A stretch of DNA of 64,000 nt, taken from IMG/VR virus record IMGVR_UViG_3300043446_003193, positions 62,001 to 126,000 of that record. One strand, written 5' to 3'. Positions 25,414 through 63,878 of this stretch are shown one piece after another. Position numbers and translations under genes: made by a program. The stretch's first letter is position 1; each line of letters starts with the position of its first letter. A model generated the notes under the pieces. The model had not been told where the DNA came from and did no database searches. It saw only the letters and a list, made by a program, of their open reading frames with translations.

Positions 25414-25414
25414 G

Positions 25415-37590: not shown

Positions 37591-39942
37591 TTATATTATT
37601 CTTTTCAAAAATATTGTTGTTCCCGCGCCTGTATAATTACTGTTATATCCTGCTATCTTAAAACGAATTGTATATGAACCACCCGTACCAATACATGAAG
37701 ATTCTACCGAGCTTTGATACATACATACATTTATTGTTAAATTACCACCACCAGAACCATATAAAGTTCTTGGTTGTGCACTTTCTTGACACCATACTAA
37801 ATAATCTGTTACAGCAGCTCCACTATAACCAGTTCCTATTAGTAATCTTCCATAATAAAAATCATAATAGGTAGCTCCTCCTGCATTTGCATTAGCAACA
37901 AGAGCTACTTCATATAAACCAACTCCATTTCTTGTTATTGTATCAAATATTGCTGTTCCTGTTCCAGAACCTGCGGTAAGTGTACTATATCCTGCTCCAA
38001 AGTAAGCAGGAGAATAAAATCCAGCAGATGAATATACTGTTCCGGATACATCTAATTTATATCCAGGACTACTCGTACCCACACCAAGATTACATTGAAC
38101 TATAAAATGTCCCATACAATTACCATATCCAACCCAATGACCGTTAGAATTATATATACCTCCCCTCCTATCACTTCCTTGGTCACCTGCATATGATATA
38201 AATGTACTATAATTACCAGAAGATGTACATACTCTAAAACCCCAATTGGTATCATTATCATTAGTTACTCCCCAATTATAGGTATTTGACATTCCTATAC
38301 AACCATTTACTGTAAGTGTTTTACTGGGTGAAGTACAATTTATACCTACACTTCCACCATTTGGATTCAATATTAAACAATAATTTGTACCTAAACCATC
38401 TGCATTAGTAGATTGTATCCAAGCATAAGTTGGAGAAACATTCATACCAAAATCCATTGTTTCACCATATAGCCCAACAGCAGGTCTTAATCTTAATATA
38501 CCACATTGAGATGTACCAGTTGTAGATGGTATACCTTGACCTGTACCAGTTGCTCCTTGGTTAACCGTTAATCTTTGGGTTGGAGTAGAAGTGCCAATTC
38601 CCATACAACCTCCTTGTATCCAGCTATCTCCATCTGTTCTTAATCTTATATATCCAGCCGCAAATGTACCACTTTCTGTACATCTACCCATATCTAAAAT
38701 AGAATGTCCTTGTGTACCATTACTGATAAAACTAAATAAATTATTGTTTGTAGTAGATGCAATTCTTGCGGATGTTGCGTTTGCTGCTAATACTTTTACT
38801 TGCAATGCACTTGCTGCATCATCAGTTACAGAATTAACTAATATTTTTGATAAACAAGCTCCTCCAGCTGTACATATTCCAGCATCAAATTTTGCAAATG
38901 CAGTACTACCATCAATAGTCATACCGGATACCCAAACTCCCGTATCATTTACTATACCAATTCTAGCATATCTATCTGTTGTAGCATCGCTTCTTCTTAA
39001 TTGAATACCACCACCATATCCTTCATTCCAAATACAGTATGTTGCTAAATTAGCAGGAAATACTAAATTACCTGATGACCTTATACCACTAGTTCCTGCG
39101 GCAATTCCCAATCCACAGACACTATTAGCAAAACACGCAGTTCCACTTCCTTTCAAATTTGCATTTACACAAACCGTAGTTCCATCATCAATTATGCAAC
39201 TATCATAGAGATGATCACCACCTCCACTCTTTGCAACATAGTTACAAGTTAAAGTGGTTTCGGTTCCTAAAGTTGCTGCTCTTGGACCGCTCATTAATAC
39301 TCCACCAGAATATCCTACTCCACTTGGGTTAGAATATATCCATCTGTTACATGTACTATCCCATAACATACTTCCAGTTACTCCATTTGCACTTCCACTA
39401 TCTTGTACGCTAATTCCGCCATATCTTACAGCGGGATTTGCAGTGTTTAAGTTTACAACATTAGTTCCGATTGAAACGGATGATGCCGAAATGTATTGGA
39501 TAGATGAGCTACCTTGAACTATAAAGTCACCTGCTATCCAAGTTGTACCGGATATAATCTGATTACCATAAAATGTATTTGAACCAGTACTTGCTAAAGA
39601 ACCGGTCTTATTTTCTAGTTCTGTCAGACGAGTATTTGCAGAAGTAGTAAAAGTATTAGTTGTATAAATAGAACTACTAAACGATTCCAATGAGGTTATT
39701 CTTGCAATGTTTGAAGCAGTAACGGTTTCAATTGAACTTACTCTATTATTTACCGAAGAACTAAATGTTGCAGTGTTACCAATGCCAAAAACGGAACCAG
39801 TAAATGATCCAGTAATAGAAGTAGCAACAACACTTCCACTTGTTTGAATTGAAGAGGACGGTGATGATGTTAAACTTACATTATTATTTACGTCGTAAGA
39901 TATTACATTTACTAAACCAGATTGTTGTCTATTTTTTCCCAT
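37591..39942 (-). CDS. Tail fibre-like protein (shared module, Cys-rich)
   Basis: Ser/Thr/Gly-rich, GIGTxTP beta-repeat motifs, shared TGSLASTGSNTF module. Confidence 0.7.
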   Translation of the reverse strand: MGKNRQQSGLVNVISYDVNNNVSLTSSPSSSIQTSGSVVATSITGSFTGSVFGIGNTATFSSSVNNRVSSIETVTASNIARITSLESFSSSIYTTNTFTTSANTRLTELENKTGSLASTGSNTFYGNQIISGTTWIAGDFIVQGSSSIQYISASSVSIGTNVVNLNTANPAVRYGGISVQDSGSANGVTGSMLWDSTCNRWIYSNPSGVGYSGGVLMSGPRAATLGTETTLTCNYVAKSGGGDHLYDSCIIDDGTTVCVNANLKGSGTACFANSVCGLGIAAGTSGIRSSGNLVFPANLATYCIWNEGYGGGIQLRRSDATTDRYARIGIVNDTGVWVSGMTIDGSTAFAKFDAGICTAGGACLSKILVNSVTDDAASALQVKVLAANATSARIASTTNNNLFSFISNGTQGHSILDMGRCTESGTFAAGYIRLRTDGDSWIQGGCMGIGTSTPTQRLTVNQGATGTGQGIPSTTGTSQCGILRLRPAVGLYGETMDFGMNVSPTYAWIQSTNADGLGTNYCLILNPNGGSVGINCTSPSKTLTVNGCIGMSNTYNWGVTNDNDTNWGFRVCTSSGNYSTFISYAGDQGSDRRGGIYNSNGHWVGYGNCMGHFIVQCNLGVGTSSPGYKLDVSGTVYSSAGFYSPAYFGAGYSTLTAGSGTGTAIFDTITRNGVGLYEVALVANANAGGATYYDFYYGRLLIGTGYSGAAVTDYLVWCQESAQPRTLYGSGGGNLTINVCMYQSSVESSCIGTGGSYTIRFKIAGYNSNYTGAGTTIFLKRII

Positions 39943-39954
39943 TTTTGTTTTTTA

Positions 39955-42276
39955 TTATACTCTATTTAATTGCCAAATATATCCCGCTGAACCAGCATAT
40001 GTTGTACCTAATGCTTGGGTTGGTCTAGATGAATCTAACACTTTAATTCTATATGCTTGGAATGGAACATCATTTGTATACCAGAAAGTAAATATTGTAC
40101 CATCCGTACATCCACTTGCATTTCCACCCATATTCTGACAGTTATTACTATTACTACATAGAAATGCCAAAGAAGTCCAAGTACCATTAGTTGCAAATCC
40201 CGATGCATTTCCCGAATTATTTGAACCTTGTAATTCAAAATATCCCCAAGAGTTAGCATGTATCCATACTTTTAATTGATTTACTGCTCTTGCTGCACCT
40301 AAATTAACTGCCCAATAACCAGGAAAATCGGTTATACCACAATGTCCTCCGTGTGTTGCAAATTGATAACTCGTATTAGAAGTAGGCATTGAAGGTGTAG
40401 CGGGTCCATATATAGTAATACATGCTGAACCCTGTCCTTGTAATCCTAATGTTCCAGCTGCTCTATAAACATCATGACACATTGAAAGATTATTAAAACA
40501 AAAGCCGGTTGCCAAATCTCCACTTCCCATTTGTACCCAAGTACTTCCGTTATAAAATTCCATTAAATTATATGATGTATTATATCTCATCATTCCGGTA
40601 CATGCCGATGGTCTTTGAGCAGTTGTTCCATTATTTGGTAAAAATCCTCCAGTACCTCCAAATGAAATATTTCCTGTTGCATTTGCTCCTATTAATTGTA
40701 TATAACAACTACCATCTGAACGATATGAGTCTAGTCTAAAAGTTGGATTTGTACTTGAATTAGGTCCTAATACACCAATTCTCGCACCGCCACTATAATA
40801 ATCTAAGTATACTTCCGATGCTTTTGATGTTTGTGCTGTTCCTGTAACGTGTATAGCTCCATTAACTTCTAATTTATCTATTGGTGATGTTGTGCCTATA
40901 CCAACATATCCACTACAATTAATGTACATTCTTTCAGTACACGTACTTCCTGCAAAAAATCCAATATTATTATTTCCGTTAGGACCACAAGATACCAATG
41001 CCAATTGTCCACTTGAACCGGCACCATAATCAACGGTCATACCAAAGAATTCATTTGCTGTTTTAAATGAATAAATTTTAGCTGCACATGCATATCCTTT
41101 ACTACTATTGAAGAAATCAATACCACCATATCCACAATCGGATGTACGATAATTTGAATAAGGAATTATACTACATGCTATTCTTAAAGTTGTAATAGTT
41201 GAATCCGTAGATATTATATTAGGTGTACATACCTGACAACCAATAGTAATAATACCAGTTTGCCATATTTTCAATCTTTCATTATATGTTCCACCACCTT
41301 CGCCATTATAAAATCCAATAGATTGACCAAGATCAGATTGTATTATTGAATATCCACCAGAACCTTTACAAACCGTTAATCCAAATGTTACTTCATCGGA
41401 TACTCTTAAAGAAGTTGCTGTAAGTGATGGTGAACATATTCTTCCACCAAAACATGCAGTTCCTGTTCCTACCAAATTATTTTTAATACAAGTAGTAGTT
41501 CCATTATCTATAATACATGAATCATATAAATGAAAACCACTTTGTACTTTTGGTATTGAATTTGTTGTTAAACGAGTCTCATTACCAACACTATCGTATG
41601 TTTCTGGACCAGTAATGACCGTTGATGAAGTTACCGCTACATTTCCTTGATGTATGAATATCCATTCATTATCGGTTGAATCAAAATAAAGTGAACCACT
41701 TTTACCACTTGCACTACCACTATCTATTGCCGAAATACCTGCAAATCTTACTGCAGGATTTGCCGTATTTAAGTTTACAACATTTGTCCCAATTGAAACG
41801 GAAGATGCTGAGATATATTGGATTGAAGAACTTCCTTGCACAACCAAATCATTTGCAACAAAAACACTTCCAGAAAATATTTGAGTTCCAATAAAGGTGT
41901 TTGAACCAGTGCTTGCTAATGAGCCAGTTTTATTTTCTAAAGATGATAATCTACTTAAATTTGATGCCGAAACCGTTTCTATTGAATTTAATCTTGCAGA
42001 AGTAGATGATGTAAATGTTTCTATACTACCAATTCTTGCAATGTTTGAAGCAGTAACTTCATGTATACTAACTAAGTCGGACGATATAGATGAAGAAAAA
42101 CTTACAACATTACCAATACCATATACAGATCCAGTAAATGAACCAGTAATAGAAATCGCTTCAATACTACCACTTAATTCCAAAGATGAAGATACAGAAC
42201 TTCCGATAATAAGATTATTATTATTATCAAATTGTATTTGTGTTGCTAATTTACCTGTATTCCTTGTTTTTCCCAT
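39955..42276 (-). CDS. Tail fibre-like protein (shared module, Cys-rich, discoidin-like C-terminus)
   Basis: Shared module; C-terminal WAVNLG...LQGSN...AYRIKV resembles an F5/8-type fold. Confidence 0.7.
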   Translation of the reverse strand: MGKTRNTGKLATQIQFDNNNNLIIGSSVSSSLELSGSIEAISITGSFTGSVYGIGNVVSFSSSISSDLVSIHEVTASNIARIGSIETFTSSTSARLNSIETVSASNLSRLSSLENKTGSLASTGSNTFIGTQIFSGSVFVANDLVVQGSSSIQYISASSVSIGTNVVNLNTANPAVRFAGISAIDSGSASGKSGSLYFDSTDNEWIFIHQGNVAVTSSTVITGPETYDSVGNETRLTTNSIPKVQSGFHLYDSCIIDNGTTTCIKNNLVGTGTACFGGRICSPSLTATSLRVSDEVTFGLTVCKGSGGYSIIQSDLGQSIGFYNGEGGGTYNERLKIWQTGIITIGCQVCTPNIISTDSTITTLRIACSIIPYSNYRTSDCGYGGIDFFNSSKGYACAAKIYSFKTANEFFGMTVDYGAGSSGQLALVSCGPNGNNNIGFFAGSTCTERMYINCSGYVGIGTTSPIDKLEVNGAIHVTGTAQTSKASEVYLDYYSGGARIGVLGPNSSTNPTFRLDSYRSDGSCYIQLIGANATGNISFGGTGGFLPNNGTTAQRPSACTGMMRYNTSYNLMEFYNGSTWVQMGSGDLATGFCFNNLSMCHDVYRAAGTLGLQGQGSACITIYGPATPSMPTSNTSYQFATHGGHCGITDFPGYWAVNLGAARAVNQLKVWIHANSWGYFELQGSNNSGNASGFATNGTWTSLAFLCSNSNNCQNMGGNASGCTDGTIFTFWYTNDVPFQAYRIKVLDSSRPTQALGTTYAGSAGYIWQLNRV

Positions 42277-42291
42277 TTTTTATAAATATTT

Positions 42292-45200
42292 TTATTGTGC
42301 TATCTCCATTATTGTCCAAGTAAAATTTCCAACAGTAGCTGCATCAAATCCTGCAGATGCGTAATACGGATTCCACTCATAATAAGCTCCACTACTTCCG
42401 GTTGTTCCAATTCTAAATATAATTGTTTTTGTTGTTGTTCCCCAAGAATTAGCCGTACCATTTAATGAAATAATACCACCATTTTGTCCATTAGGACCAA
42501 AATTATATAAATATTGACCAGATTTAACCAAAATTGTACCATCAGTATGATTTGCAGCCCATAAATAAAAATGATCAGATACATTTGATCTTTCCCACAT
42601 AACAACACTATTTGTCATTATTAATATTTTTGATGTTGCTGATTTTGGTGTAAATGTTGTTTGTGCTATGTTTAATCCCTGATTATATGCCGGTGTACTA
42701 CCCCCTGCTTCATTTGTTCCCATGCTTGAACCAGTACCTTGTGCTCCGGATGAAACTGTTGCGTTTCCTGTTACAACTTGAATTGGTGTTCCAGGTGCGA
42801 ATATATTACAAGTAAAATTAGCAAAACCACTTTTATCAATAGTAACTACTTTACCGGCTCCAGTATACATTGCAATATACGCACAACTACAATTGGTATA
42901 TGGTACTTGGAATTCATTAATATTATGATTATATGCAATTGCACCCACATTTGTATTATTTCTAGCAAAATTTATTGAACTATATGAACACCCTGCTGCT
43001 ACATCTATTTTAACCTGATTATCATTTAATCCCAAAATATGAAGAGTACTTCCAGGAGTTGTTGTACCAATTCCCACTCTTCCACCACTAGAACCATTTA
43101 AAATCAAACAAGATGCTTCAATTGCTAATTTTTTATATTCATTATCACCATAATTATCTATATAAGAAGCGTTACCCGCTGATTGAAAATATAATCTAGA
43201 GTTACCCACATCATTTGTACCACCTAATCTTATTGAAGCCGTGCAAGATGAACCAGTATTTAATATTTGTAAATCACACATACATACTCTACCATAAAAT
43301 TTAGCAATACCATCATTAAATACCCTAAATAAAGCAGCAGTATCTTCATAATTATTTAATCCCCAAGCTCCACCATTTGCAGTGGTTCCTGCATTATGAA
43401 AAACAATTTGATTATTACCTGCATAAAATAGTCTTGAAAAAGTACTATTGTTAGATTTTACAAATACAGTATCTCTATTACAACCATCTATATAAAGTTG
43501 ACAAGATAGTGTAACTGCTCCAGTATTTGCAATTGATATTCTATTATTATTTGCGGTTTGTAATGCTAATGCTGCCTGGCTATTTATTAATATATTTCCG
43601 GTAGAATTTGATGCTTCCATTCCACCTAATTGAGTAATTCCATTATAAAAATAAACACCAGAATAGCCAGTTGTGCAGCCATTATTTATTGAAATTGCGG
43701 GATATTGTCCTGCTCCAGTACATGCATTGTTATTACATATTTCCAATTGGAATCTAGGAGTACATGTACCCATACCCACTTTACCACTACTACTAATAAA
43801 TAAATCAGGAGTAACACCAGCATCTTGTGTACTAAATTGTAAATTTCTACCAATACCCGATGATGTTGTTGTTGACTTAAATCTATTATAATTTGGTAAC
43901 GAACCATCAAAGAAAAAACTACCACTATCATCCATTACTTGGAATTTTCCAGCTGGTGAATTTGTATTAATACCTACACTTCCACTCATTTCCCAAATAC
44001 AACTATCATATAAATGGTCACCACCTCCAGACTTTGCTACATAATTACAGGTGAGTGTTGTTTCCGTACCAAAAGTTGCTGCTCTTGGTCCGCTCATCAA
44101 CACACCACCACTATAACCAACACCTGAAGGATTAGAATATATCCAACGATTACAAGTACTATCCCATAATAAACTTCCGGTTACACCATTTGCACTTCCG
44201 CTATCTTGTACACTTATACCTGCATATCTAACGGAAGGGTTTGCAGTGTTTAGGTTTACTATGTTTGTTCCAATACTTACTGAACTTGCTGAAATATATT
44301 GAATAGATGAAGAACCTTGTACTATAAAATCTCCAGCTATCCAAGTTGTACCAGATATGATTTGTGTGCCATAGAATGTGTTACTTCCAGTACTTGCTAA
44401 ACTTCCTGTTTTATTTTCTAAAGAATTTAGTCTTGAAGTTGCCGAAGAAGTAAATGTATTAGTAGCCGAATTACTTGCTGTAAATGAATTAAGTGATGAA
44501 AGTATTCCTATTACTTGAGCAGAAGATGAAACTGTGCCTACCGGTAAAGAATTAACTAAATTGATACTTCCACTATTAAGAGTGTCCGTTGTAACTATAC
44601 TTTGTGCAGTAATTGTATTTGTAACTTGTCCTTGTGGGTTTACTAAATAAATTGAACCACTTCCAACATATATGTGTCGGAACGGTTTATCAGTAGTACC
44701 TAAATCATATGCACCACTTACTGCAGGGATAATACTTCCACCAGCAATTATAGATGAACCACTTATAGAAATTACACTACTACCACTAATTCCACTTTGA
44801 GAACTAAAATATGCAAATTGTCCGGCTTCTCCACCACCACCAATACCACTAAACGCACCAATTTGGTTATTATATACAAAAATATCTATCACTTCTCCAC
44901 CAGTCGCAGCTTCTGTTAATATAATTGATGTTCCGTTATTTGCAGTATATTCTTCACTCGCCAAATGAGAACCATTGAAATATACATCAATAAGTCCAGG
45001 TGTATAATCTACTAAAAATGTAGTTTGTGATGCCGATGCTGTAAATGATGTTTTTGTTCTTAATGCGTTTTGTTCAACACCACTAACTGGTCTAAATGTT
45101 ACCAATTCAACAATATCTCCCGTTTGGTTTGAACCAGTTGTTAGAGTTATTGTACTTCCATTGATATCACTAAATTCAGTTGAATCTAATTTTGTACCAT

Positions 45201-45594
45201 TATAATAAACTTGTACTAAACCAGTTAAATATCCGTATGATGAATTGAATACAGTTTGTCCGGCAGTTGCAACAAATCTTTCAGTATTTAAGATTGCATT
45301 ACTTCCACTTATTGCTATTAGTTGTCCACCACTTATCGCAGCAACATAATTTACACCACTCCCACTTAAGTCCGAAACAAATAATGAACCAGTGATTGTA
45401 GTTGTTGTATTAATATTAAATCCACCGGTGCTTGAAATTGATGCTGTATATGAACCTGTACCGATTTGAGATGGGTTCAATCCTTCAATTCTACTAACAA
45501 TTGATGCACTTAATGCGGACAATTCTGATGCTGATATTACATTTTCTCCGTTAATTGAAAGTGAACCAGTGACTCTTAGGTTATGTTGTCTCAT
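42292..45594 (-). CDS. Large tail fibre-like protein
   Basis: Two TAGQTVF/SASQTTF...NG repeats, shared module, GIGTTTP repeats. Confidence 0.7.
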   Translation of the reverse strand: MRQHNLRVTGSLSINGENVISASELSALSASIVSRIEGLNPSQIGTGSYTASISSTGGFNINTTTTITGSLFVSDLSGSGVNYVAAISGGQLIAISGSNAILNTERFVATAGQTVFNSSYGYLTGLVQVYYNGTKLDSTEFSDINGSTITLTTGSNQTGDIVELVTFRPVSGVEQNALRTKTSFTASASQTTFLVDYTPGLIDVYFNGSHLASEEYTANNGTSIILTEAATGGEVIDIFVYNNQIGAFSGIGGGGEAGQFAYFSSQSGISGSSVISISGSSIIAGGSIIPAVSGAYDLGTTDKPFRHIYVGSGSIYLVNPQGQVTNTITAQSIVTTDTLNSGSINLVNSLPVGTVSSSAQVIGILSSLNSFTASNSATNTFTSSATSRLNSLENKTGSLASTGSNTFYGTQIISGTTWIAGDFIVQGSSSIQYISASSVSIGTNIVNLNTANPSVRYAGISVQDSGSANGVTGSLLWDSTCNRWIYSNPSGVGYSGGVLMSGPRAATFGTETTLTCNYVAKSGGGDHLYDSCIWEMSGSVGINTNSPAGKFQVMDDSGSFFFDGSLPNYNRFKSTTTSSGIGRNLQFSTQDAGVTPDLFISSSGKVGMGTCTPRFQLEICNNNACTGAGQYPAISINNGCTTGYSGVYFYNGITQLGGMEASNSTGNILINSQAALALQTANNNRISIANTGAVTLSCQLYIDGCNRDTVFVKSNNSTFSRLFYAGNNQIVFHNAGTTANGGAWGLNNYEDTAALFRVFNDGIAKFYGRVCMCDLQILNTGSSCTASIRLGGTNDVGNSRLYFQSAGNASYIDNYGDNEYKKLAIEASCLILNGSSGGRVGIGTTTPGSTLHILGLNDNQVKIDVAAGCSYSSINFARNNTNVGAIAYNHNINEFQVPYTNCSCAYIAMYTGAGKVVTIDKSGFANFTCNIFAPGTPIQVVTGNATVSSGAQGTGSSMGTNEAGGSTPAYNQGLNIAQTTFTPKSATSKILIMTNSVVMWERSNVSDHFYLWAANHTDGTILVKSGQYLYNFGPNGQNGGIISLNGTANSWGTTTKTIIFRIGTTGSSGAYYEWNPYYASAGFDAATVGNFTWTIMEIAQ

Positions 45595-45655
45595 TCGTAG
45601 TTATTCTCTGTTTAATTAATACTACATATAAGTATTTAATTTCTTCCGAATTGAG

Positions 45656-45817: not shown

Positions 45818-45827
45818 ATTATTATTT

Positions 45828-46679
45828 TTAATATCCAAATCTTGCTTTTGTTACATTATAATTATTTAATATCTCTGCATCGGATAATGCTCTATTATAT
45901 ATAAAATATGTAGCAATTGCACCATTATTAAATTCACCAGGAGTGTTATCTGCTTTAGTGTGTGCACCAATTAAATATGTTTTATTTGGTTTGTTTTGTA
46001 CTCCCGATTTAGATGTACTTGTATATAGTGAACCATTTATGTACATTTTTTGTGTAGTTCCATCAAATGTTTGTGCCAAATTATACCACGTATTATATGA
46101 ATATGTAGAATGTAAATCACTATTTGATGTACCACCACCTGTTGTAATTCTTGTACTCATATATCCAATTGCAAGTCCGTTTAGATAAATTTCAACACCT
46201 TGATATACTGAACTTTCATATCCAGTACCACCTAATATCATTACTTTTTCAGAATATGTATTATTATTAAACCAAATTTGAGTTGTGGAATAATCCGTTG
46301 CAGGTGAAGAAGATAAACTCATATATCCTCCACCTAAATAAGATGCAGCAGGTGCGTATGTTCCAGTAAATTGATAATATCTAATATTACCGGAAGTTTG
46401 AATTACAGGATTTGATCCACCATTATATGAATTTGGTAATGCATAATATCCAGTATTTAATAAATTATACCAAGCACTATTATTTGCATATGTTGCATTT
46501 TTTGCATCCAAATACCAAGTCATTCCACTAGTTACTACACCGGTACCATAAAATTCACTCATTCCATCAGGTGTTGATTTTCCCATCGTATTACTTAAAG
46601 ACCTCAACGAATATGAAGGACTCCCTAATTCCGAAGCTATTTGACCGATTGATATACATCCGCTACTTTGTAATGCCAT
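45828..46679 (-). CDS. Concanavalin A/LamG-like lectin-domain virion protein
   Basis: LDAKN...WYNLAQTFDG...MYING...YNRALSDAEILNNY LamG pattern. Confidence 0.8.
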   Translation of the reverse strand: MALQSSGCISIGQIASELGSPSYSLRSLSNTMGKSTPDGMSEFYGTGVVTSGMTWYLDAKNATYANNSAWYNLLNTGYYALPNSYNGGSNPVIQTSGNIRYYQFTGTYAPAASYLGGGYMSLSSSPATDYSTTQIWFNNNTYSEKVMILGGTGYESSVYQGVEIYLNGLAIGYMSTRITTGGGTSNSDLHSTYSYNTWYNLAQTFDGTTQKMYINGSLYTSTSKSGVQNKPNKTYLIGAHTKADNTPGEFNNGAIATYFIYNRALSDAEILNNYNVTKARFGY

Positions 46680-49033: not shown

Positions 49034-49077
49034 CTATATTCTGTTTTTGAATATAAATATCAATTTTTACTATTAAA

Positions 49078-49830: not shown

Positions 49831-49832
49831 AA

Positions 49833-52706: not shown

Positions 52707-52709
52707 ATC

Positions 52710-55866: not shown

Positions 55867-55906
55867 TTAGTTAGTCCGATTTGTTATTTTTTATAAATAT
55901 TATCTA

Positions 55907-56254
55907 TTATGGTTTATTAGGCCAATTTATAATATCAGTTACATTTGTTATAGTTGATATTAAATCTCTTAATTCTTGTCTATAAGTTTGCCACTCCACT
56001 TTTTTTTCTTCACTTAATGGAGAATCAATGTTTTGTGTCCAATCGGATTCTGCTAATCTCTTATCTCTTTCTAATCTTACAAAATTTTTATGATTTTCTA
56101 ATATTATATTTTCTAATTCTTCAGATGTAGCCAAACTAATATCATCTGGAATAGGCATATTTAATATTATTGGATTGGCAACAAGATTATCATAATTTTT
56201 ATTGATATATTCTACTGAACCGTCTTCTTTTTCTATTTTTATAAAATCACTCAT
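55907..56254 (-). CDS. Tail fibre assembly chaperone
   Basis: RLERDKRLAESDWTQ...WQTYRQELRDL...WPNKP. Confidence 0.8.
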   Translation of the reverse strand: MSDFIKIEKEDGSVEYINKNYDNLVANPIILNMPIPDDISLATSEELENIILENHKNFVRLERDKRLAESDWTQNIDSPLSEEKKVEWQTYRQELRDLISTITNVTDIINWPNKP

Positions 56255-56266
56255 AATATTAAAATT

Positions 56267-56725: not shown

Positions 56726-56728
56726 AAT

Positions 56729-59098
56729 TTATATAATTTCTTGTAATTGAATTTTGAATTTTTTATTATTTTTGTTGTTGATGATATATAAGTTTTCAGA
56801 ACCCTCTTGTATTGTCCAATTACCATTTGTACCATCAATATCATTACCACCACATTTACCTTCATTACTTAAATGTAAGTCGTTTGTATATATGTGAGCC
56901 CAAGCACAAGTTGAAGTTCCTAAACAATATGTATTATTAGCAGATGGTGCTAAGTTTACAGATACTTGAATACCATCATCTGCAATGTGTAGTTTTAGAG
57001 TTTGATTTGATAATAATCCACCTGTCCAAAATAAGTGTCCTTTACCTGCTGATAAATTTCCACCATATTGATAATAGTTTGTATAGTCAGCTGCCGTACC
57101 GGCTCTATTACCTCTTATAATAATACTATGATTTGCATCTGCTGCGTATATCCATCCATATCCACTACTATTTACAATTCCAATATCACCACAAGTTTTA
57201 GAACTACTAACAATCAATCCGTTTCCTGCACAAACTGTTGATGAAAAACATGCAATACCAGTTCCATAGAAACTTGCGTATTCGGTTGGTGCACCGTTTA
57301 CAAATGCTATTCTTTGGCCACCAACACTAGCATATTGAACTATATACGTGTTTGATGTATTCCCTAAATATAAACCAGATGCTGATCCATCTGCTCTGTT
57401 AATTCCTATACATCCCCCATTTGTTTGAATTTGGCAACCAAAAGTAGTTATACCGTTTGCTGCAATAGTAAGTCTAGTTTGACCAGTAGTTTGAAATAAT
57501 AATCCACCATATGTCATAGCCGATCTATATGATGTACCTATTTTACCATCACATCCACTAATTCCTACATAAATACCAGCATCATTTCCACCTGCTCCTT
57601 CAAACCAAGCTACATCACAAGATGCTATACCTTTAACTTGTAATGTTTGGTATACTCCTCCTGTTGTGCTCCAAGCTTGTCCAACTCCTATACAATTTAT
57701 TACCGCTTGTGGTGCACAAATTGTATTAGAAAAACAAGAAACACCATTGGTAGTATCTATTTTCAATAAACTAGTAAAAGTAAAAGAACATCCTGCTGCC
57801 TGGCATGCGGCACCTTGAAATAATATATTTTGATTATATCCACTAACAACTATTCCGGCTGATCCGTATGATCCATTTTTAATATAAGATGTACCATTAT
57901 AGTAACCATTTGATGTAATATACATTTCTGGCAATCCAATGTAATTGGCTATATTATTTCCATTTCTACCTTCAATAATAGGTGCTACTGGATTTCCCCA
58001 ACCACTTAAAGTTGAAATACCTGATCCAAATCTATCTCCTAAAACATTACCACAAATTATAGATTGGGATGTACAAATTGTATTAGAAAAACAAGCTACA
58101 CCATTGGTATCTATTTTTAATCTAGAATTTGTATTATTAGAATAAAATACCAAATTTTTATTTGTAGATGTACTAGATGCGTAAACAAAAGTATCATTTG
58201 GATCACTATAAATTGAAAGTGGATTTGAACTTGTACATCCAAAATAATTTGTATTTGCAAATGCGTATATTGATGATCCAGCGATAACCGTACTTCCAAA
58301 ACACGCAGTTCCTGTTCCTACCAAATTATTTTTAATACAAGTTGTAGTCCCGTTATCAATAATACAAGAATCTACAATGTGGAATCCACTTTGTACTTTT
58401 GGAATGATGTTTGTCGTTAATTTAGTTTCATTACCTAAATTATCATATGTTTCAGGACCAGTAATCATTATAGATGAAGTTACTGCCAAATTTCCCTGAT
58501 GAACAAATATCCATTCGTCATCTCTTGAATCAAAATATAATGAGCCACTCTTTCCTGCAGCTGAACCACTATCTACAGCCGATATTCCTGCATATCTTAC
58601 AGATGGATTAGCAGTATTTAATAGAACAGTATTTGTACCTATACTTACCGCAGAAGCAGTAATGTTTTGAAGTGAAGAAGAACCCTGAACTACTAAGTTA
58701 TTTTGAATGTAAACAGTTCCACTTATAATTTGGTCTCCAATAAGTGTATTACTTCCAGTACTTGCCAAACTACCAGTTTTATTTTCTAAATTAGTAAGAC
58801 GAGTATTTTGAGTAGTATTTGTAGTATCTACTGATGCTGATTTGGTTTCTAATGCATTTATTCTAGCTACATTTGAAGCAGTAATTGTTTCAATAGAACT
58901 CAATCTTGCGGAAGTAGAAGATGTAAATGTATTAGTTCCAGATATACTCGCAGTAAATGTATTGGTAGATGACGTAAATGTATTATTTGCATTTATATCA
59001 ATTCCGGCAATAGATCCACTAAATGAACCCGTTAGGGATACATTTGAACCAGTTGCTACCGTTGTTGTTCCTTTTAATTGTGGCGAATATATCTTCAT
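56729..59098 (-). CDS. Tail fibre-like protein (shared module, Cys-rich)
   Basis: Shared module; C-terminal WTIQEGSENLYIIN domain. Confidence 0.7.
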   Translation of the reverse strand: MKIYSPQLKGTTTVATGSNVSLTGSFSGSIAGIDINANNTFTSSTNTFTASISGTNTFTSSTSARLSSIETITASNVARINALETKSASVDTTNTTQNTRLTNLENKTGSLASTGSNTLIGDQIISGTVYIQNNLVVQGSSSLQNITASAVSIGTNTVLLNTANPSVRYAGISAVDSGSAAGKSGSLYFDSRDDEWIFVHQGNLAVTSSIMITGPETYDNLGNETKLTTNIIPKVQSGFHIVDSCIIDNGTTTCIKNNLVGTGTACFGSTVIAGSSIYAFANTNYFGCTSSNPLSIYSDPNDTFVYASSTSTNKNLVFYSNNTNSRLKIDTNGVACFSNTICTSQSIICGNVLGDRFGSGISTLSGWGNPVAPIIEGRNGNNIANYIGLPEMYITSNGYYNGTSYIKNGSYGSAGIVVSGYNQNILFQGAACQAAGCSFTFTSLLKIDTTNGVSCFSNTICAPQAVINCIGVGQAWSTTGGVYQTLQVKGIASCDVAWFEGAGGNDAGIYVGISGCDGKIGTSYRSAMTYGGLLFQTTGQTRLTIAANGITTFGCQIQTNGGCIGINRADGSASGLYLGNTSNTYIVQYASVGGQRIAFVNGAPTEYASFYGTGIACFSSTVCAGNGLIVSSSKTCGDIGIVNSSGYGWIYAADANHSIIIRGNRAGTAADYTNYYQYGGNLSAGKGHLFWTGGLLSNQTLKLHIADDGIQVSVNLAPSANNTYCLGTSTCAWAHIYTNDLHLSNEGKCGGNDIDGTNGNWTIQEGSENLYIINNKNNKKFKIQLQEII

Positions 59099-59123
59099 TC
59101 TTTAATTCTTTTTTATAAATATT

Positions 59124-60728
59124 TTATTTTGTTTTAAGTTCGTCCAATTCTTTTCTTAATTTTTGAACTTCGGACAATAATACAATTGACAATTTTTCAT
59201 AGTCAACATTTCTTACTACTTTATTATCTTCTTCATCTTTCAATATTGCCAATTCTGGATAAACTTCTGCTACATCTTCCGCTATCAAACCTATTTGTGT
59301 TCCTGATTTTAATTCTTTTCCTAAATGACACCATTCATCTTTGTATTGATATGTCACAGGAGTCAATTTCATAAACATACAACTATCGGTATTATATTGA
59401 CAAATAGATTGTTTATATTCACAAGAAGAACCTGCTGCGTAAAATGCTCCGTTTACATATAATTTGTAAGTAGTATTAATATTAGCAGCATTTACAGAAA
59501 CATTACCACATGCTCCCACTAAAAATCTAGGATTACCACTATAATCTTCTCCTTTTATAATTTCATTTGTTGCATTTGAACCCGCTTTAACATATAATCC
59601 TGCAGAATCACCTGTTTTAGTATTATATAATCTAACCAAATAATCACCAATACTACATTGTACATCTAATTTATAAGCAGGACAAACTACACCAATTCCA
59701 ACATGTCCATTATTCATAAAACGAACATTCTCAGTAAATACTGATCCGCAATATTGACCAAAAGTTATGCCACCACACTGTTCACCAGCAGTACCGGTAT
59801 ACATTAAAAATTGACTGTTTCTTATACCAAACCCATATCTATCATTTACCGAACCATTATCATATACAAGAAGTTTACAATCGTTTATTATACTTCCTAA
59901 ACTAACTTGTCCACATGGTGTTATATTGTTTACACCAACATATCCATTACTAGCTAAATGCAATCTTCTTATGCCATTTGATTGAATTGAAAATGGAGTA
60001 GCACCGGTGGTTCCAATTAAACCTTCCGATTCGGTATATGCTCCTAAACTATCAGAACTACTTGCTCTCTGTAGTCTTAATTCAGCATAAGTAGTAGATG
60101 ATCTTTGAAAAAATATAGCCGGTTGATATATACATTGATGGTGTGAATCAAGGTACATAAACATATGTTCACCGGTTGATCTAAAAATTGTTTGGTTTCT
60201 AAGAGTATTTTCAACTGTCAAACCATCTAATGAAGTTGTTGAATATACATGTAGTTTGGATGATGGGGATGTTGTACCCATTCCAATATATCCATTATTT
60301 TTTATACTTAATGCAACACACGCTGTGTTCATTAAAATATTAAAATTATTATCGTACGCTCGTATATAGTGTGAACTTGTAGAATTTTGCAATCTTATTT
60401 CAGGACCAGAACCTCCTGCTTGGCAAATATGCAGCATTTCAGTAGGAGCGTATGTACCAATACCAACATGTCCACCCCAATCAAATGTTACAGCAGCATT
60501 TGCACCATCAACTCCTTCTCTATAAAAAATTAAATTACAATATCCTTGTGAAAAATTTGTACCAGTTGAATATATTGACCAGGTTTGTCCATTAACACTC
60601 GTGTTTTTTAATTGAATTGCCGCATCTCCTACAGCCGAACCTTGTGCTGTAAATCCTAAACCTGGAGTATCCGTTCCTGCTCCTATTTTACCAGAGGCTG
60701 TCCATGTACCATTTACACAATATGCCAT
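59124..60728 (-). CDS. Tail fibre-like protein with degenerate S74-like chaperone
   Basis: GIGTxxP repeats; PVTYQYK...IGLIAEDV...VDYEKLSIVLL; lacks the shared module. Confidence 0.75.
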   Translation of the reverse strand: MAYCVNGTWTASGKIGAGTDTPGLGFTAQGSAVGDAAIQLKNTSVNGQTWSIYSTGTNFSQGYCNLIFYREGVDGANAAVTFDWGGHVGIGTYAPTEMLHICQAGGSGPEIRLQNSTSSHYIRAYDNNFNILMNTACVALSIKNNGYIGMGTTSPSSKLHVYSTTSLDGLTVENTLRNQTIFRSTGEHMFMYLDSHHQCIYQPAIFFQRSSTTYAELRLQRASSSDSLGAYTESEGLIGTTGATPFSIQSNGIRRLHLASNGYVGVNNITPCGQVSLGSIINDCKLLVYDNGSVNDRYGFGIRNSQFLMYTGTAGEQCGGITFGQYCGSVFTENVRFMNNGHVGIGVVCPAYKLDVQCSIGDYLVRLYNTKTGDSAGLYVKAGSNATNEIIKGEDYSGNPRFLVGACGNVSVNAANINTTYKLYVNGAFYAAGSSCEYKQSICQYNTDSCMFMKLTPVTYQYKDEWCHLGKELKSGTQIGLIAEDVAEVYPELAILKDEEDNKVVRNVDYEKLSIVLLSEVQKLRKELDELKTK

Positions 60729-60734
60729 AATCTA

Positions 60735-63700
60735 TTACTTTATTTCTATTAAGTTAAATTTATATTTTTTACAACTTATTTGATTTATAATAAATAAGTC
60801 ATTTTCTCCTTCTTGTATTAACCAACTACCTCTTGTACCATCTACATAATTTGCACATTCATAATTTAAGTTACTCAATCTTAAGTCATTTGTTCCGATT
60901 GTTTTAGCAGTTAAATCACAAGCAAAACAAGCAACACCATTTGATGCTATTCTAAATCTTTCAGTAATAGAACTTGCATTTCCTCCTGTAAAAAATGATA
61001 TTCTTGCGTTTGTTCCTAATGCCGAAACATCCAATTGATCAGCACTTACATTAAATCCATATCTTTGACCATTTGAAGGGCTTTCTCCATAAAGTAATAA
61101 AGAAGGTAAACCAGCAGTACCACTTTGTCCACATATGTGCAATGTAGATAAAGGTAAAGAAGTTCCTATACCAACACAACTCCCACTTTCATAAATTGCA
61201 CTATCATAAAGATGATCACCACCACCTGATTTTGCTATGTAGTTGCAAGTCAAAGTAGTTTCAGTTCCAAAAGTTGCTGCTCTTGGTCCACTCATAATAA
61301 TACCACCACTATATCCTACTCCAGATGGATTTGAGTATAACCAACGATTACATACTGAATCCCAAAGAATTGATCCAGTTACACCTGCAGAACTTCCACT
61401 ATCTTGTACACTTATACCTGCATATCTAACTGCAGGTGTTGAAGTATTTAAAGTTACAATATTTGTTCCAATACTTACTGAACTCGCTGAAATATACTGA
61501 ATAGATGAAGAACCTATTACTATTAAGTCGCCGGTTACATATGTTGAACCACTCATAATAGTAGTTCCTTTGAATGTATTACTTCCGGTTGTTGCTAAAG
61601 AACCAGTTAGTGATTCAATACTATTTAATCTATTTGTTTGTACTAAATCAGTTGTTGCAATAGAAGAACTAAATGTTGAATAGTTATTAGTTAAAGTTAC
61701 ATCAACTTGTGATGAACCAGATACAACACCATTATTTGCGTATATTGAACCACTAAATCCTGTTGAACATATGTTACCGCTAAATTTACCAGTACCTTCA
61801 ACATATAATGTGTATCCGGTATTTGCGTATTCGTTATTAATGTTTACACTTCTGCTGTAAAAATTTGCTATCGTTTGTCCGGCAACAATTGTTCTAATAT
61901 TTGTAGTTTGACTATTATTTGTATCAAAGTATGTATTATTACTCCAACCCAATCCATATCCAGGTTGTATTCTAGCACCTTGTTCTAAATTAGAAAATCC
62001 TCCAATATATAAATCATCCCAAAGATGTGTAGGGTCTCCTAAACTATATGCACTATATGTTACATTAGTTGCAGGTATTACATTTTGATTTAATGAATTT
62101 AAGTAAGATGCAGTTAATGAATTTACTGCGTTTGAAGCAGTTACATATGCTATTGGTGTCCAACTTGCAGTATAAGGTGAACCTGCTGAAACTTGTAAAA
62201 CATATCCTGCATAAGATGAACTAATAGAAGGTAAGTCACCACCTATTGTACCAATTGCCCAACCTGCTGCCGCTTCAGGGAATGTAATTAGAGATGAAGT
62301 GTTATCCGTTAATACAATTGTTTGAGGAATTATTTTCTCGTAATTACTGTCAAATGTTTGGATATTAACAAATCTATCTCCAAAATTATGTTCAAATCTC
62401 CATTCTAAAGAAGATGTAAAACTTTGTTTAACTGTTCTACCATTCACTTCAATTATACCACCAATACCTGCTACCGCGTATCCAGCAACTGGTGTACCAA
62501 ATTCTAAAACTAAAGTATTCACATCAGTTGCAGTAATGGTTTGTGGAAGAACTATTTGTCCGGAATTATTATAAACCGTTACATTTGGATATTGTACATT
62601 TAAATTATGCGTGAATGTCCAAGTTGCTGCAGAGGTAGTTTGTGTATGTATTTTTCCACCTCCAGTTAATCCGGTCAATAGAGAACCATCACCTTTGAAT
62701 GAACCAGTAAATGAACCAGTGAACGGGTCTGTTAAGGTTACAAATTGTGCAGATCCAGATATTAATGTAGGTTTTTCAGTTAATTCAGTAAATGTAATTG
62801 GTGTACCTACTTGTCTATATCTTAAATCTAAAGATGCTGTTGTTTGTTCTGAACCACTAATAATTCCGCCTGGTTTATTTGCAATATTGTCCCAAGTTGT
62901 TTGAGTTATTGAACCGCTTAAAACATATCTATTATCGTATGAAGCGGTCAATTGTGCAGATGAACTTACTAAACCATTTGATGCAGATATTGGGCCCGTT
63001 ACTTGTAAAGTACCATTAACTATTATTTTATTTCCACCCGTTTGAGTAATAATAGAATCGGAAATGTGGTCATCTCCACTTGCTACCGGAAGATATCCAG
63101 TTGTTAAACCAATTTCATTTCCCAAAGAACCCGTATTTTTAGGTCCTGCTATTAATATTGCCGAACTATATGCTGCTCCAGATGGATTTTCGTATATCCA
63201 ATGATTATTTACCGAATCCCACCAAAGAGAACCGGTTCCAGATGTACTTCCAGAATCTTGTACACTTATACCACCAAAACGAACTGCAGGTGTTGCTGTA
63301 TTTAATAAAACCGTATTTGTTCCAATACTTACTGCCGAACCCGTAATATTTTGAATTGATGATGTACCTTGAACAATTAAATTTTCAGTTACATATAAAG
63401 AACCACTCATTATTTGTGTTCCTTTAAATGTATTTGAACCAGTTGTTGCAAATGAAGATTCAATTACATCTAATCTTGTATCAATTGATGCGGATAAAAC
63501 ATTTGTACTTGCTGCACTTGCACTAAATGATGTTGCAACGGAGGAACTAAAGTCTCCAGTAACAGTTGAAACCGAAGCAGATAATGCTGAAATATTTGCA
63601 TTACTTGCACTTATTGATGTTGCAACGGAAGAAGAAAATGATTGTGTAAATGAATTAATAGCAGATAACGAAGTATCAACCGATGCCGATTTTGCTTCCA

Positions 63701-63878
63701 AAGAATTTAATCTCAATGCCTGTGAACCACTATCTGTTGATAATTCATTAAGCCTTTGATTAATTGAAGCGGAAGCAGCTAAAAACGAAGACGATACTGC
63801 TGTATATCTAGGTATTTCTGCTGTTTGTCCGGCTTGCTGTATTAAGGAACCGGTTATAATAGGACTATCTAAAATCAT
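60735..63878 (-). CDS. Large tail fibre-like protein with two copies of the shared module
   Basis: Module at both ends; two WTFTHNL/WRFEHNF repeats; C-terminal WLIQEGENDLFIIN domain. Confidence 0.7.
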   Translation of the reverse strand: MILDSPIITGSLIQQAGQTAEIPRYTAVSSSFLAASASINQRLNELSTDSGSQALRLNSLEAKSASVDTSLSAINSFTQSFSSSVATSISASNANISALSASVSTVTGDFSSSVATSFSASAASTNVLSASIDTRLDVIESSFATTGSNTFKGTQIMSGSLYVTENLIVQGTSSIQNITGSAVSIGTNTVLLNTATPAVRFGGISVQDSGSTSGTGSLWWDSVNNHWIYENPSGAAYSSAILIAGPKNTGSLGNEIGLTTGYLPVASGDDHISDSIITQTGGNKIIVNGTLQVTGPISASNGLVSSSAQLTASYDNRYVLSGSITQTTWDNIANKPGGIISGSEQTTASLDLRYRQVGTPITFTELTEKPTLISGSAQFVTLTDPFTGSFTGSFKGDGSLLTGLTGGGKIHTQTTSAATWTFTHNLNVQYPNVTVYNNSGQIVLPQTITATDVNTLVLEFGTPVAGYAVAGIGGIIEVNGRTVKQSFTSSLEWRFEHNFGDRFVNIQTFDSNYEKIIPQTIVLTDNTSSLITFPEAAAGWAIGTIGGDLPSISSSYAGYVLQVSAGSPYTASWTPIAYVTASNAVNSLTASYLNSLNQNVIPATNVTYSAYSLGDPTHLWDDLYIGGFSNLEQGARIQPGYGLGWSNNTYFDTNNSQTTNIRTIVAGQTIANFYSRSVNINNEYANTGYTLYVEGTGKFSGNICSTGFSGSIYANNGVVSGSSQVDVTLTNNYSTFSSSIATTDLVQTNRLNSIESLTGSLATTGSNTFKGTTIMSGSTYVTGDLIVIGSSSIQYISASSVSIGTNIVTLNTSTPAVRYAGISVQDSGSSAGVTGSILWDSVCNRWLYSNPSGVGYSGGIIMSGPRAATFGTETTLTCNYIAKSGGGDHLYDSAIYESGSCVGIGTSLPLSTLHICGQSGTAGLPSLLLYGESPSNGQRYGFNVSADQLDVSALGTNARISFFTGGNASSITERFRIASNGVACFACDLTAKTIGTNDLRLSNLNYECANYVDGTRGSWLIQEGENDLFIINQISCKKYKFNLIEIK

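What the first reader, a model, noticed from the sequence alone, without database searches (positions are those of the whole stretch)
37591..63878. Array of seven fibre paralogues sharing one ~140-aa module but carrying unrelated distal domains
Seen: the LENKTGSLA(S/T)TGSNTF...QGSSS...GTN...LNT(A/S)NP..R(Y/F)AGIS..DSGS...DS...W...GP...E module occurs 8 times (twice in 60735-63878), preceded by variable coiled-coil stalks. The distal parts differ (discoidin-like, S74-chaperoned, others). More than 26 kb is devoted to adhesins. Inference: the module is a common docking or trimerisation unit that lets many receptor-binding fibres attach to one virion, or lets alternative fibre sets be displayed, for a broad or polysaccharide-rich host surface.
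Basis: partly seen in the sequence, partly recalled or inferred. Interest (0 to 1): 0.65.

Follow-up and report, generated by a model that had tools for sequence, protein, structure and literature searches.

The report
Shared junction module in phage fibres
A 209-kb uncultured freshwater phage gives about 42 kb to a row of tail-fibre genes that share an undescribed ~150-residue, probably trimer-forming junction module, after which the receptor-binding ends are swapped freely; this follows the known modular fibre principle, with a new building block and unusually many copies.

Summary
The module occurs 8 times in 7 ORFs of the window (profile E 1e-69 to 1e-80). The array continues past the window edge. 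The whole 209-kb freshwater myovirus has 10 full copies in 9 proteins plus one diverged copy, in about 42 kb.

The module has no Pfam, PHROG or PDB relative and no match in GenBank phages. It is nevertheless a large family: 2,634 cluster representatives in metagenomes.

A trimer prediction gives an intertwined homotrimer (ipSAE 0.91, best control 0.00). "Common docking unit" is not supported:
- The module is internal to every fibre.
- Each paralogue has its own N-terminal peptide class, conserved across related phages (69-98% identity).
- Similarity to same-class orthologues mostly ends within -6 to +27 residues of the module end.

Best reading: each fibre is an N-terminal address, a heptad coiled-coil stalk, the junction module, and an exchangeable, mostly Cys-rich distal binding part. 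The module locks chain register and marks the preferred exchange boundary.

The paralogues are old (dS 0.8 or more, dN/dS 0.09-0.29). I found no reverse transcriptase and no inversion switch.

Verdict: a new variant of the known modular multi-fibre theme. Interest is moderate.

The parts
37591..39942 (-). Fibre A (783 aa), N-terminal class MGKNRQQSG; module at 39175-39636; Cys-rich distal part
39955..42276 (-). Fibre B (773 aa), class MGKTRNTGK; module at 41494-41958; discoidin-like C-terminus (lead only)
42292..45594 (-). Fibre C (1100 aa), class MRQHNL.VTGS; long N-terminal part; module at 43978-44439
45828..46679 (-). 283-aa ConA/Laminin_G_3 lectin-like protein between fibres C and D; no module
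   Evidence: PF13385, E 6e-15
46679..49033 (-). Fibre D (784 aa), class MLINDAQITGSL; module at 47945-48403; C-terminal S74 intramolecular chaperone; no cysteine
49078..51951 (-). Four non-fibre genes inside the array: DUF5672 (264 aa), 235 aa, 170 aa, and a 299-aa protein that is GT9-like (lead only)
   Evidence: the same trio lies beside fibre genes in relative L003
52017..53456 (-). Tandem paralogues of 229 and 248 aa (53% identical), phrog_15727 'virion structural protein'
53425..55866 (-). Fibre E (813 aa), class MLQYNP.VSGSL; module at 54988-55452; conserved C-terminal NDL.LSN...EG.NDL motif
55907..56254 (-). Tfa-like tail-fibre assembly chaperone (115 aa)
   Evidence: PF16778, E 1.5e-17; phrog_4912
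56729..59098 (-). Fibre F (789 aa), class MKIYS.QLKG; module at 58343-58807; same C-terminal motif as E and H
59124..60728 (-). Fibre-like protein G (534 aa) with no stalk and no module; GIGT..P..L.V repeats and an S74 chaperone
60735..63878 (-). Fibre H (1047 aa), class MILDSPIITGSL; two modules at 63030-63482 and 61176-61637, separated by a region matching virion-structural-protein PHROGs
34696..36936 (-). Tail sheath, with tail tube at 34160-34648, directly downstream of the array. This anchors the block in the tail module of a T4-like myovirus

Best explanation
The block is the host-recognition gene cluster of an uncultured freshwater T4-like myovirus. Each module-bearing gene encodes a homotrimeric fibre built from four parts:
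1. A short N-terminal peptide that differs between paralogues and is conserved class by class in related phages. I infer that it is the position-specific docking end.
2. A Ser/Thr-rich heptad coiled-coil stalk of variable length.
3. The ~150-aa module, predicted to be a tightly intertwined homotrimer. I infer that it locks the three chains in register where the alpha-helical stalk changes into the beta-structured distal shaft. It would then be a folding and junction unit, not the virion-attachment site.
4. An exchangeable distal receptor-binding part. It is mostly Cys-rich and has its own C-terminal folding aid: an S74 chaperone, a shared C-terminal motif, or a separate Tfa-like chaperone.

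The C-terminal edge of the module is the preferred boundary at which distal parts have been exchanged between phages.

Shown: the copy number, the conservation pattern, the boundary, and the age of the duplications. Predicted: the trimer. Inferred: docking through the N-termini, the junction role, and joint display on one virion.
For: - **Copies.** 8 in the window, and 10 full plus 1 diverged in the genome.
- **Trimer.** ipSAE 0.91/0.91/0.92 against a best control of 0.00. The mark was reached by 20 of 30 proteins solved as pairs and 1 of 23 solved as single chains. The runs share at least 95% of contacts, with pLDDT 92. Residues 26-78 lie wholly in the interface.
- **Stalk.** Helix before the module and heptad periodicity.
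- **N-terminal classes.** The metagenomic homologues fall into the same N-terminal classes as the window paralogues. Within a class, the pre-module part and the module align in nearly all pairs (51-88% identity), while the distal parts align in only 0-35% of pairs.
- **Boundary.** Similarity to same-class orthologues ends -6 to +27 aa from the module end in 26/33 (J), 20/26 (E), 9/17 (B), 8/16 (C), 8/15 (I) and 3/3 (A).
- **N-terminal conservation.** The first 25 aa are 69-98% identical within a class, against 64-81% for the module.
- **Old paralogues.** 47-90% aa but only 54-80% nt identity, longest identical run 46 nt, dS 0.8 or more, dN/dS 0.09-0.29.
- **Other lakes.** Contigs from four other freshwater samples cover the stalk, the module and the C-terminal motif of E and F, but hardly any of the central distal parts.
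- **Context.** A fibre chaperone and S74 domains lie in the block.
Against: - No experiment or solved structure exists. The trimer is a model, and its calibration was for two copies, not three.
- The N-terminal classes were defined by their first 5-7 residues, which inflates their identity somewhat. It stays at about 0.6-0.97 after discounting those residues.
- The module's nearest neighbour belongs to the same N-class in only 109 of 186 cases. Six of the ten window copies are closer to a paralogue in their own genome than to any sampled same-class orthologue. Address and module are therefore not strictly co-inherited.
- Very high conservation (up to 90% aa at saturated synonymous sites) could also reflect a shared binding partner.
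- Holes in contig coverage prove nothing.
- Nothing shows that all fibres are in virions.
Confidence: 0.55

Rival explanations
1. The module is the common docking unit. All fibres bind one conserved acceptor on the baseplate or neck through the module, so many fibres compete for or share the same sites.
For: It is the only block shared by all nine fibres and is under strong purifying selection. Sheath, tube and several unnamed structural genes lie near module genes in 16-22 of 79 related loci.
Against: The module is internal, not terminal. Almost every residue lies in the trimer's own predicted interface, which leaves little conserved free surface. Class-specific N-termini are at least as conserved. 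In all fibre systems I know of (from memory, not tested here), docking uses the N-terminus or a dedicated branching domain. The co-occurring genes are explained by synteny within one myovirus lineage.
Confidence: 0.13
2. The module is a branching platform. The short N-terminal peptides of other fibres dock onto the module of a fibre already on the virion, and this builds a branched fibre tree. Fibre H, with two modules, would carry two branches.
For: Each fibre has both a short conserved N-terminal peptide and the module. Pairs of a branching domain and a conserved peptide are proven in Klebsiella podophages (PMC13352976). Hyperbranched fibres exist in jumbo myophages (PMC9700779). Nine or more fibre types exceed the usual number of baseplate sites (inference).
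Against: No T4 gp10-like or other known branching domain was detected by Pfam or PHROG. The only hint is an Atlas TM of 0.40 to a cluster partly annotated T4_gp9_10_N. Phages with one copy keep the module. This was not tested, because the single complex job went to the homotrimer.
Confidence: 0.12
3. The module is a generic low-specificity adhesin, for example a glycan binder. It would give every fibre a first reversible hold on the cell, with the distal part adding specificity.
For: It is beta-rich, with invariant polar residues (R, D, D, E, H, DSGS). Fibre shafts with sugar sites are known, for example the Bdellovibrio fibre with GlcNAc (8ol4), a weak hit.
Against: There is no lectin or enzyme fold match: best Z 4.0 and 3.8, and Foldseek E above 1. 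The module sits proximal to 400-800 residues of distal fibre, far from the tip. It is conserved across phages whose distal parts, and presumably hosts, differ.
Confidence: 0.07
4. Assembly artefact. Fibre genes of several co-occurring strains were strung together through the shared repeat, which inflated the array.
For: The record is a metagenome contig. The module is a dispersed repeat. Laid contigs show joints between paralogous module regions.
Against: Copies are only 54-80% identical in DNA, with a longest exact run of 46 nt. Each gene has a distinct N-terminal class. Independent contigs from other samples carry several classes side by side: L003 has C, I, D; L005 has F, E, C; L019 has D, C, B. 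The size and the 100% completeness estimate fit relatives of 223-237 kb.
Confidence: 0.03

Closest known systems
Host recognition cluster (HRC) of aquatic T4-like myophages (pelagimyophages and cyanomyophages; PMC7029224)
   Same: A large island of about 34-45 kb in the structural region. It holds several tail-fibre genes mixed with glycosyltransferase-type genes and differs between otherwise syntenic phages.
   Different: This phage belongs to another lineage. Its sheath is closest to Microcystis phage Mel-JY01 (46%) and Flavobacterium phage immuto (41%). In the passages of that paper that I read, no shared internal module or N-terminal address classes are described.
Branched multi-RBP systems: Ackermannviridae TSP1-4, Klebsiella phiK64-1/RaK2/phiKp24, KP32-type dual RBPs (PMC11414711, PMC10253068, PMC9700779, PMC13352976)
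   Same: Many receptor-binding proteins in one genome. The proximal parts are conserved and the distal specificity domains are exchangeable. Short conserved peptides serve as docking elements.
   Different: Those systems use T4 gp10-like branching or anchor domains and mostly depolymerase tailspikes. Here no such domain and no depolymerase was detected. The conserved unit is a coiled-coil stalk plus a new internal module.
T-even distal fibre locus (gp37/gp38), where recombination between conserved motifs swaps adhesin specificity (from memory, not checked here)
   Same: Conserved sequence blocks flank variable adhesin segments and mark the exchange points.
   Different: T4 has one long-fibre set. 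Here at least nine parallel fibre genes each carry the block. There is no sequence relation. The only weak structural hit is T4 gp34 (Z 4.0, rmsd 4.7 A over 120 residues).
T4 fibritin, reovirus sigma1 and adenovirus fibre architecture (from memory)
   Same: An N-terminal anchor, a trimeric coiled-coil or shaft, and a compact element that sets trimer register.
   Different: The fibritin foldon is about 30 aa and C-terminal. This module is about 150 aa, internal, and followed by 400-800 residues. No sequence similarity was found.
Bdellovibrio bacteriovorus chimeric fibre (MAT) proteins (PMC10769870)
   Same: A family of paralogous trimeric fibres with a common proximal part and diverse adhesive tips, used for broad target recognition. 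Two of them are among the weak fold hits (8ojn Z 3.6, 8ol4 Z 3.2).
   Different: Those are bacterial proteins, not virion proteins. The matches are too weak to claim kinship.

Membership tests
Any curated protein family covering the module (Pfam-A, PHROGs v4, PDB sequences) | Significant profile or sequence match over the ~150-aa block | tested here: not met
   No Pfam or PHROG family covers it in any of the 9 proteins. PDB phmmer and profile searches found nothing below E 1.8. tblastn against 50,697 GenBank phages found no match.
Trimeric phage tail fibre | Homotrimer formation of the shaft | tested here: met
   Prediction only: ipSAE 0.91 against a best control of 0.00, pLDDT 92, runs agree in at least 95% of contacts. 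No experiment.
Trimeric phage tail fibre | Fibre-specific folding aids in or beside the genes (S74 intramolecular chaperone, Tfa-type chaperone) | tested here: met
   PF13884 in D (6e-16), G (3e-7) and L1109 (6e-16). PF16778 in 55907-56254 (1.5e-17).
Trimeric phage tail fibre | Presence in purified virions | not testable with these tools
   The phage is uncultured. The weakly related proteins of phages immuto and Mel-JY01 are annotated 'structural protein' by their depositors.
Branched RBP systems (gp10-like branching domain plus docking peptide) | T4 gp10-like / XD branching domain | tested here: not met
   No PF07880 or related hit in any fibre. The only signal is an Atlas TM of 0.40 to a cluster partly carrying it.
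Branched RBP systems (gp10-like branching domain plus docking peptide) | Short conserved N-terminal docking peptide | tested here: inconclusive
   Class-specific N-terminal peptides are conserved at 69-98%. Their binding partner is unknown.
Host recognition cluster of aquatic T4-like myophages | Large variable island in the structural region holding tail fibres and glycosyltransferase-type genes | tested here: met
   About 42 kb between the neck/head genes and the sheath. Content and order differ in relatives. GT9-like lead and DUF5672.
Host recognition cluster of aquatic T4-like myophages | Position between VrlC and neck gene gp14, and kinship with pelagimyophages or cyanomyophages | tested here: inconclusive
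   The flanking genes have no Pfam names. The sheath is closest to Mel-JY01 and immuto, not to pelagi- or cyanomyophages. No psbA.
Diversity-generating retroelement targets (Mtd-type fibres) | Reverse transcriptase in the genome | tested here: not met
   No PF00078 match in the 209-kb record.
Invertible fibre-gene switches (Mu Gin / P1 Cin type) | Inverted repeats flanking alternative fibre segments | tested here: not met
   All genes lie on one strand. Only two weak inverted pairs were found (71-80% over 30-34 nt).

The most novel reading that the evidence does not exclude
The module and the class-specific N-terminal peptides are a matched plug-and-socket set. Fibres would dock onto each other's modules and build a branched tree of nine or more receptor-binding fibres on one particle. 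That would be a branching system unrelated to the gp10-type domains known so far, and it would be widespread in freshwater myoviruses.
Probability: 0.12. Interest if true: 0.8.

Novelty: new variant of a known kind. Interest (0 to 1): 0.5.

Why it matters
The module is a large protein family with no curated name: 2,634 cluster representatives, all viral as far as I could see. It marks the fibres of an abundant group of uncultured freshwater myoviruses. Naming it would allow three things: host-recognition genes could be found automatically in metagenomes, the exchangeable receptor-binding part could be delimited, and a natural junction for chimeric fibres would be available. With 10 copies plus one diverged copy and about a fifth of its genome in fibres, this phage has the most module copies of the ten large records I compared. 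It is therefore a good test case for how many fibres one tail can carry, and why.

Tried and rejected
- **GenBank phages.** megablast and tblastn with the sheath region, the module, fibre K and a longer stalk-plus-module piece found no module match.
- **PDB by sequence.** Nothing with a single sequence or with an 89-sequence profile.
- **Fold searches, whole-module monomer model** (pLDDT 82). Foldseek PDB best E 2. VIA-wide best Z 4.0 (T4 gp34, rmsd 4.7 A, 120 aligned), followed by Bdellovibrio fibres and T7 gp17 at Z 3.5-3.6. BFVD best E 6e-3, to uncultured-phage fibre-like proteins. The Atlas returned only the family itself.
- **Fold searches, beta sub-domain alone** (pLDDT 88). Best Z 3.8, to generic beta-meanders; Foldseek E above 2. 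I do not claim a new fold, because a monomer model of a chain-swapped trimer is a poor probe.
- **Prokaryote genomes.** A pattern scan of 185,579 genomes found no relative, so it gave no prophage and no host clue.
- **T4 late-promoter motif.** TATAAATA lies within 60 nt upstream of only 4 of 189 genes, none of them in the fibre block, so this says nothing about timing.
- **psbA and reverse transcriptase.** Both absent.
- **Recent gene conversion.** Rejected as the reason for the likeness of the copies, because synonymous sites are near saturation.
- **Search of the 223-kb JGI relative** for its copy number. Not possible, because the record is not held.
Full report
**1. What the window is**

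The window is bases 62001-126000 of a 209,443-bp IMG/VR virus record. The record has 31.8% G+C and an estimated completeness of 100%. Of 189 called genes, 188 lie on the minus strand.

It is a T4-like myovirus. It has a Gp23-type major capsid protein, a tail sheath at 34696-36936, a gp19-type tube at 34160-34648, and a T4_baseplate protein at 33223-34059. It also encodes a family-B DNA polymerase, a ribonucleotide reductase and a DnaB-type helicase.

The nearest cultured phages by sheath are Microcystis phage Mel-JY01 (46%) and Flavobacterium phage immuto (41%). Near-identical DNA occurs in freshwater and lake metagenomes of at least ten studies. There is no psbA. The host is unknown.

**2. 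The observation**

The motif block is present eight times in seven ORFs, at the stated places.
- A profile built from the copies scores them at E 4e-69 to 6e-80.
- A DNA repeat search finds the same eight places independently (family D1).
- The block is about 150 aa long, with 21 invariant and about 32 nearly invariant columns among the genome's 11 copies.

The same profile finds full copies in two more ORFs just beyond it, at genome 126251-129643 (1130 aa) and 129654-132191 (845 aa). It also finds a diverged copy in a 637-aa protein (139680-141593, E 2e-20) and pieces of the first sub-domain in a 1109-aa S74-bearing fibre.

The fibre block therefore runs from about genome 99.6 to 141.6 kb. 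That is roughly 42 kb, a fifth of the genome. It contains 10 full module copies in 9 proteins.

The interval is not all fibres. It also holds:
- a ConA-like lectin protein;
- four non-fibre genes (DUF5672, two unnamed, one GT9-like by a language-model lead);
- a tandem pair of 'virion structural protein' paralogues;
- a Tfa-type fibre chaperone;
- a module-less S74 fibre.

**3. Anatomy of one fibre**

*N-terminus.* The paralogues begin differently: MGKNRQQSG (A), MGKTRNTGK (B), MRQHNLRVTGS (C), MLINDAQITGSL (D), MLQYNPTVSGSL (E), MKIYSPQLKG (F), MILDSPIITGSL (H), MAGQYRFKD (I), MRIDSAIITGSF (J), MAQIIKHRRG (K).

*Stalk.* The stretch before the module is Ser/Thr-rich and free of cysteine. It has 14- and 21-residue repeats, seen as 42-nt DNA periods (D5). 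Heptad periodicity beats shuffles in most stalks: 0 to 5 of 500 shuffles for six, 23 to 28 for two, and not significant over the last 70 residues of C.

*Module.* An AlphaFold2 monomer model (89-sequence alignment, pLDDT 82) shows a helix, a 60-residue stretch without secondary structure, and a beta-rich part. As three copies, the model is confident and heavily interlocked.
- ipSAE was 0.91, 0.91 and 0.92. The best of three controls scored 0.00.
- That mark was reached by 20 of 30 proteins solved as pairs and by 1 of 23 solved as single chains.
- The runs agree in at least 95% of contacts, with pLDDT 92 and about 720 contacts.
- Residues 26-78 lie entirely in the interface.
- The helix contacts fall at positions 2, 5, 9, 12, 16, 19 and 23, which is an a/d pattern.

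The calibration was for dimers, and my own alignment was used. This supports a trimer but does not show one.

*Distal part.* After the module the paralogues share little. The distal parts are Cys-rich (2.5-4.1%, against 0.9% genome-wide), except in D and K, which have no cysteine. Their endings differ:
- S74 in D;
- a shared ~45-aa C-terminal motif in E, F and H;
- a discoidin-like end in B, as a lead only.

No depolymerase-type domain was reported.

**4. The family outside this genome**

The module has no Pfam, PHROG or PDB relative and no tblastn match in 50,697 GenBank phage records. It is nonetheless very common in metagenomes.
- The word search found 1,145 proteins.
- The exhaustive profile search found 2,634 cluster representatives, 1,398 of them at E 1e-30 or better.
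- IMG/VR has at least 256 loci.

Of the 79 loci fetched, 22 also carry homologues of this phage's sheath and tube, so much of the family belongs to one broad myovirus lineage. A pattern scan of 185,579 prokaryote genomes found none.

Mel-JY01 and immuto each have only a weak partial match (E about 1e-8). It lies near the C-terminus of a protein that the depositors call 'structural protein'.

Nine other large virus records hold 1 to 5 full copies each. This genome therefore has the most copies of the ten large records compared.

**5. What is conserved with what**

This is the central result.
- The metagenomic proteins fall into the same N-terminal classes as the window paralogues.
- Within a class, the pre-module part and the module align in almost all pairs (median 51-88% identity). 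The distal parts align over at least 60% of their length in only 0-35% of pairs: for example 7 of 153 for B and 11 of 351 for E.
- I measured where similarity to each window paralogue stops. It stops -6 to +27 residues from the module end in 26 of 33 (J), 20 of 26 (E), 9 of 17 (B), 8 of 16 (C), 8 of 15 (I) and 3 of 3 (A).
- The first 25 residues are 69-98% identical within a class, against 64-81% for the module. The classes were defined by the first 5-7 residues. Discounting those leaves about 0.6-0.97.
- Contigs from four other lakes, laid at 80% likeness or more, cover the stalk, the module and the C-terminal motif of E and F but almost none of the central distal parts. Holes in contig coverage are weak evidence.
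- Address and module are mostly but not always inherited together. The module's nearest neighbour has the same N-class in 109 of 186 cases. Six of the ten window copies are nearer to a paralogue in their own genome than to any sampled same-class orthologue.

**6. Age of the copies**

The copies are 47-90% identical in protein but only 54-80% in DNA, and the longest identical run is 46 nt. For the closest pairs dS is 0.8-1.6 and dN/dS is 0.09-0.29. The likeness is therefore kept by selection on the protein, not by recent gene conversion.

I found no reverse transcriptase and no inverted repeats suited to an inversion switch. Nothing points to programmed variation or alternative expression. The genes are packed on one strand with gaps of 3-65 nt, apart from two larger gaps of 233 and 372 nt. 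Joint late expression is a reasonable inference, but no more than that. The T4 late-promoter motif is not informative here.

**7. Interpretation**

The best reading is a four-part fibre: address peptide, coiled-coil stalk, junction module, exchangeable distal binder. The module most likely locks the three chains in register at the change from alpha-helical stalk to beta-structured shaft. Its C-terminal edge is where new distal parts have been joined. An autonomous trimer core would allow many different distal parts to fold behind it.

- the module is internal;
- the model leaves little free surface on it;
- the paralogues have separate, well-kept N-terminal classes.

I could not exclude that the module also binds something shared. 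That could be a baseplate acceptor, or the N-terminal peptides of other fibres as in branched RBP systems (PMC13352976, PMC9700779). The single complex job went to the homotrimer, so neither was tested.

**8. Comparison and novelty**

Large fibre-rich host-recognition islands with glycosyltransferase genes are already described for aquatic T4-like myophages (PMC7029224). Conserved-proximal, variable-distal receptor-binding proteins are a general rule (PMC6872550, PMC11414711).

Three things are new here:
- the module itself, a large unannotated family;
- the set of about ten N-terminal address classes that recur across phages;
- the size of the array.

I rate this a new variant of a known kind, of moderate interest.

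All sequences were passed by reference.

Noticed in passing
L002:251-15593 (genome 126251-141593), just beyond the window's right edge: The fibre array continues here. There are two more full-module fibres (1130 and 845 aa), an S74 fibre with partial module pieces (1109 aa), a 1224-aa fibre/baseplate-wedge-like protein whose homologues lie near module genes in 29 of 79 related loci, and a 637-aa protein with an MAQIIKHRRG N-terminus and a diverged module near its C-terminus.
   Followed up: partly
window 49078-51951: Four non-fibre genes sit in the middle of the array: DUF5672, two unnamed, and a 299-aa protein whose nearest Atlas clusters partly carry Glyco_transf_9. A similar trio (299, 228 and 261 aa with DUF5672) lies beside fibre genes in the 223-kb relative L003. 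This recalls the glycosyltransferases in pelagimyophage host-recognition clusters.
   Followed up: partly
window 37591-63878, distal halves of fibres A, B, C, E, F, H (and I, J in L002): The distal parts hold 14-30 cysteines each in A, B, C, E, F, I and J, and 5 in the short 146-aa distal part of H. That is 2.5-4.1%, against 0.9% genome-wide. The stalks have none. The cysteines often lie in a repeated G(V/I)(A/S)CFS.T(I/V)C unit, and the first ones come right at the module end. Fibres D and K have no cysteine at all. This suggests disulfide- or metal-stabilised shafts.
   Followed up: partly
window 53425-53560, 56729-56880, 60735-60880 (C-termini of E, F, H): A shared ~45-aa C-terminal motif (NDL.LSN ... 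W.IQEG.NDL ... K.Y.F.L.E) has no Pfam family. It is also covered by contigs from other lakes. It could be a second kind of C-terminal folding or trimerisation element besides S74.
   Followed up: no
window 52017-53456: Two tandem paralogues (229 and 248 aa, 53% identical) match phrog_15727 'virion structural protein' at E 1e-65. They lie directly downstream of fibre E in the direction of transcription (both on the minus strand). They might be small tip or accessory proteins.
   Followed up: no
window 59124-60728: A 534-aa fibre-like protein has an S74 chaperone and GIGT..P..L.V repeats but no stalk and no module. It starts 6 nt after the stop of the two-module fibre H. It may be a separate distal piece that needs another protein to reach the virion.
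   Followed up: no
IMG/VR loci L004-L082: In more distant phages the commonest N-terminus of module-bearing proteins is MAQIIKHRRG-like (16 of about 98). Related forms such as MAAIFQLRRG also occur. This is the type carried by the diverged 637-aa protein here, and it resembles the Mtd-type N-terminal domain that appeared as a weak BFVD hit. It may be the ancestral arrangement.
   Followed up: partly
genome 168610-179491 (outside the window): Two very large ORFs (1598 and 2031 aa) lie downstream of the head genes. The first has a fibre-like Ser/Thr/Gly-rich start. They were not examined.
   Followed up: no
window 21975-32730: Seven ORFs lie downstream of the tube gene (694, 422, 124, 803, 97, 482 and 921 aa). 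The 694-, 803-, 482- and 921-aa ORFs had no PHROG hit, and the 482- and 921-aa ORFs also had no Pfam hit. The 422-, 124- and 97-aa ORFs were not scanned. By position this is presumably the baseplate, and it would hold the candidate docking partners for the fibres.
   Followed up: partly
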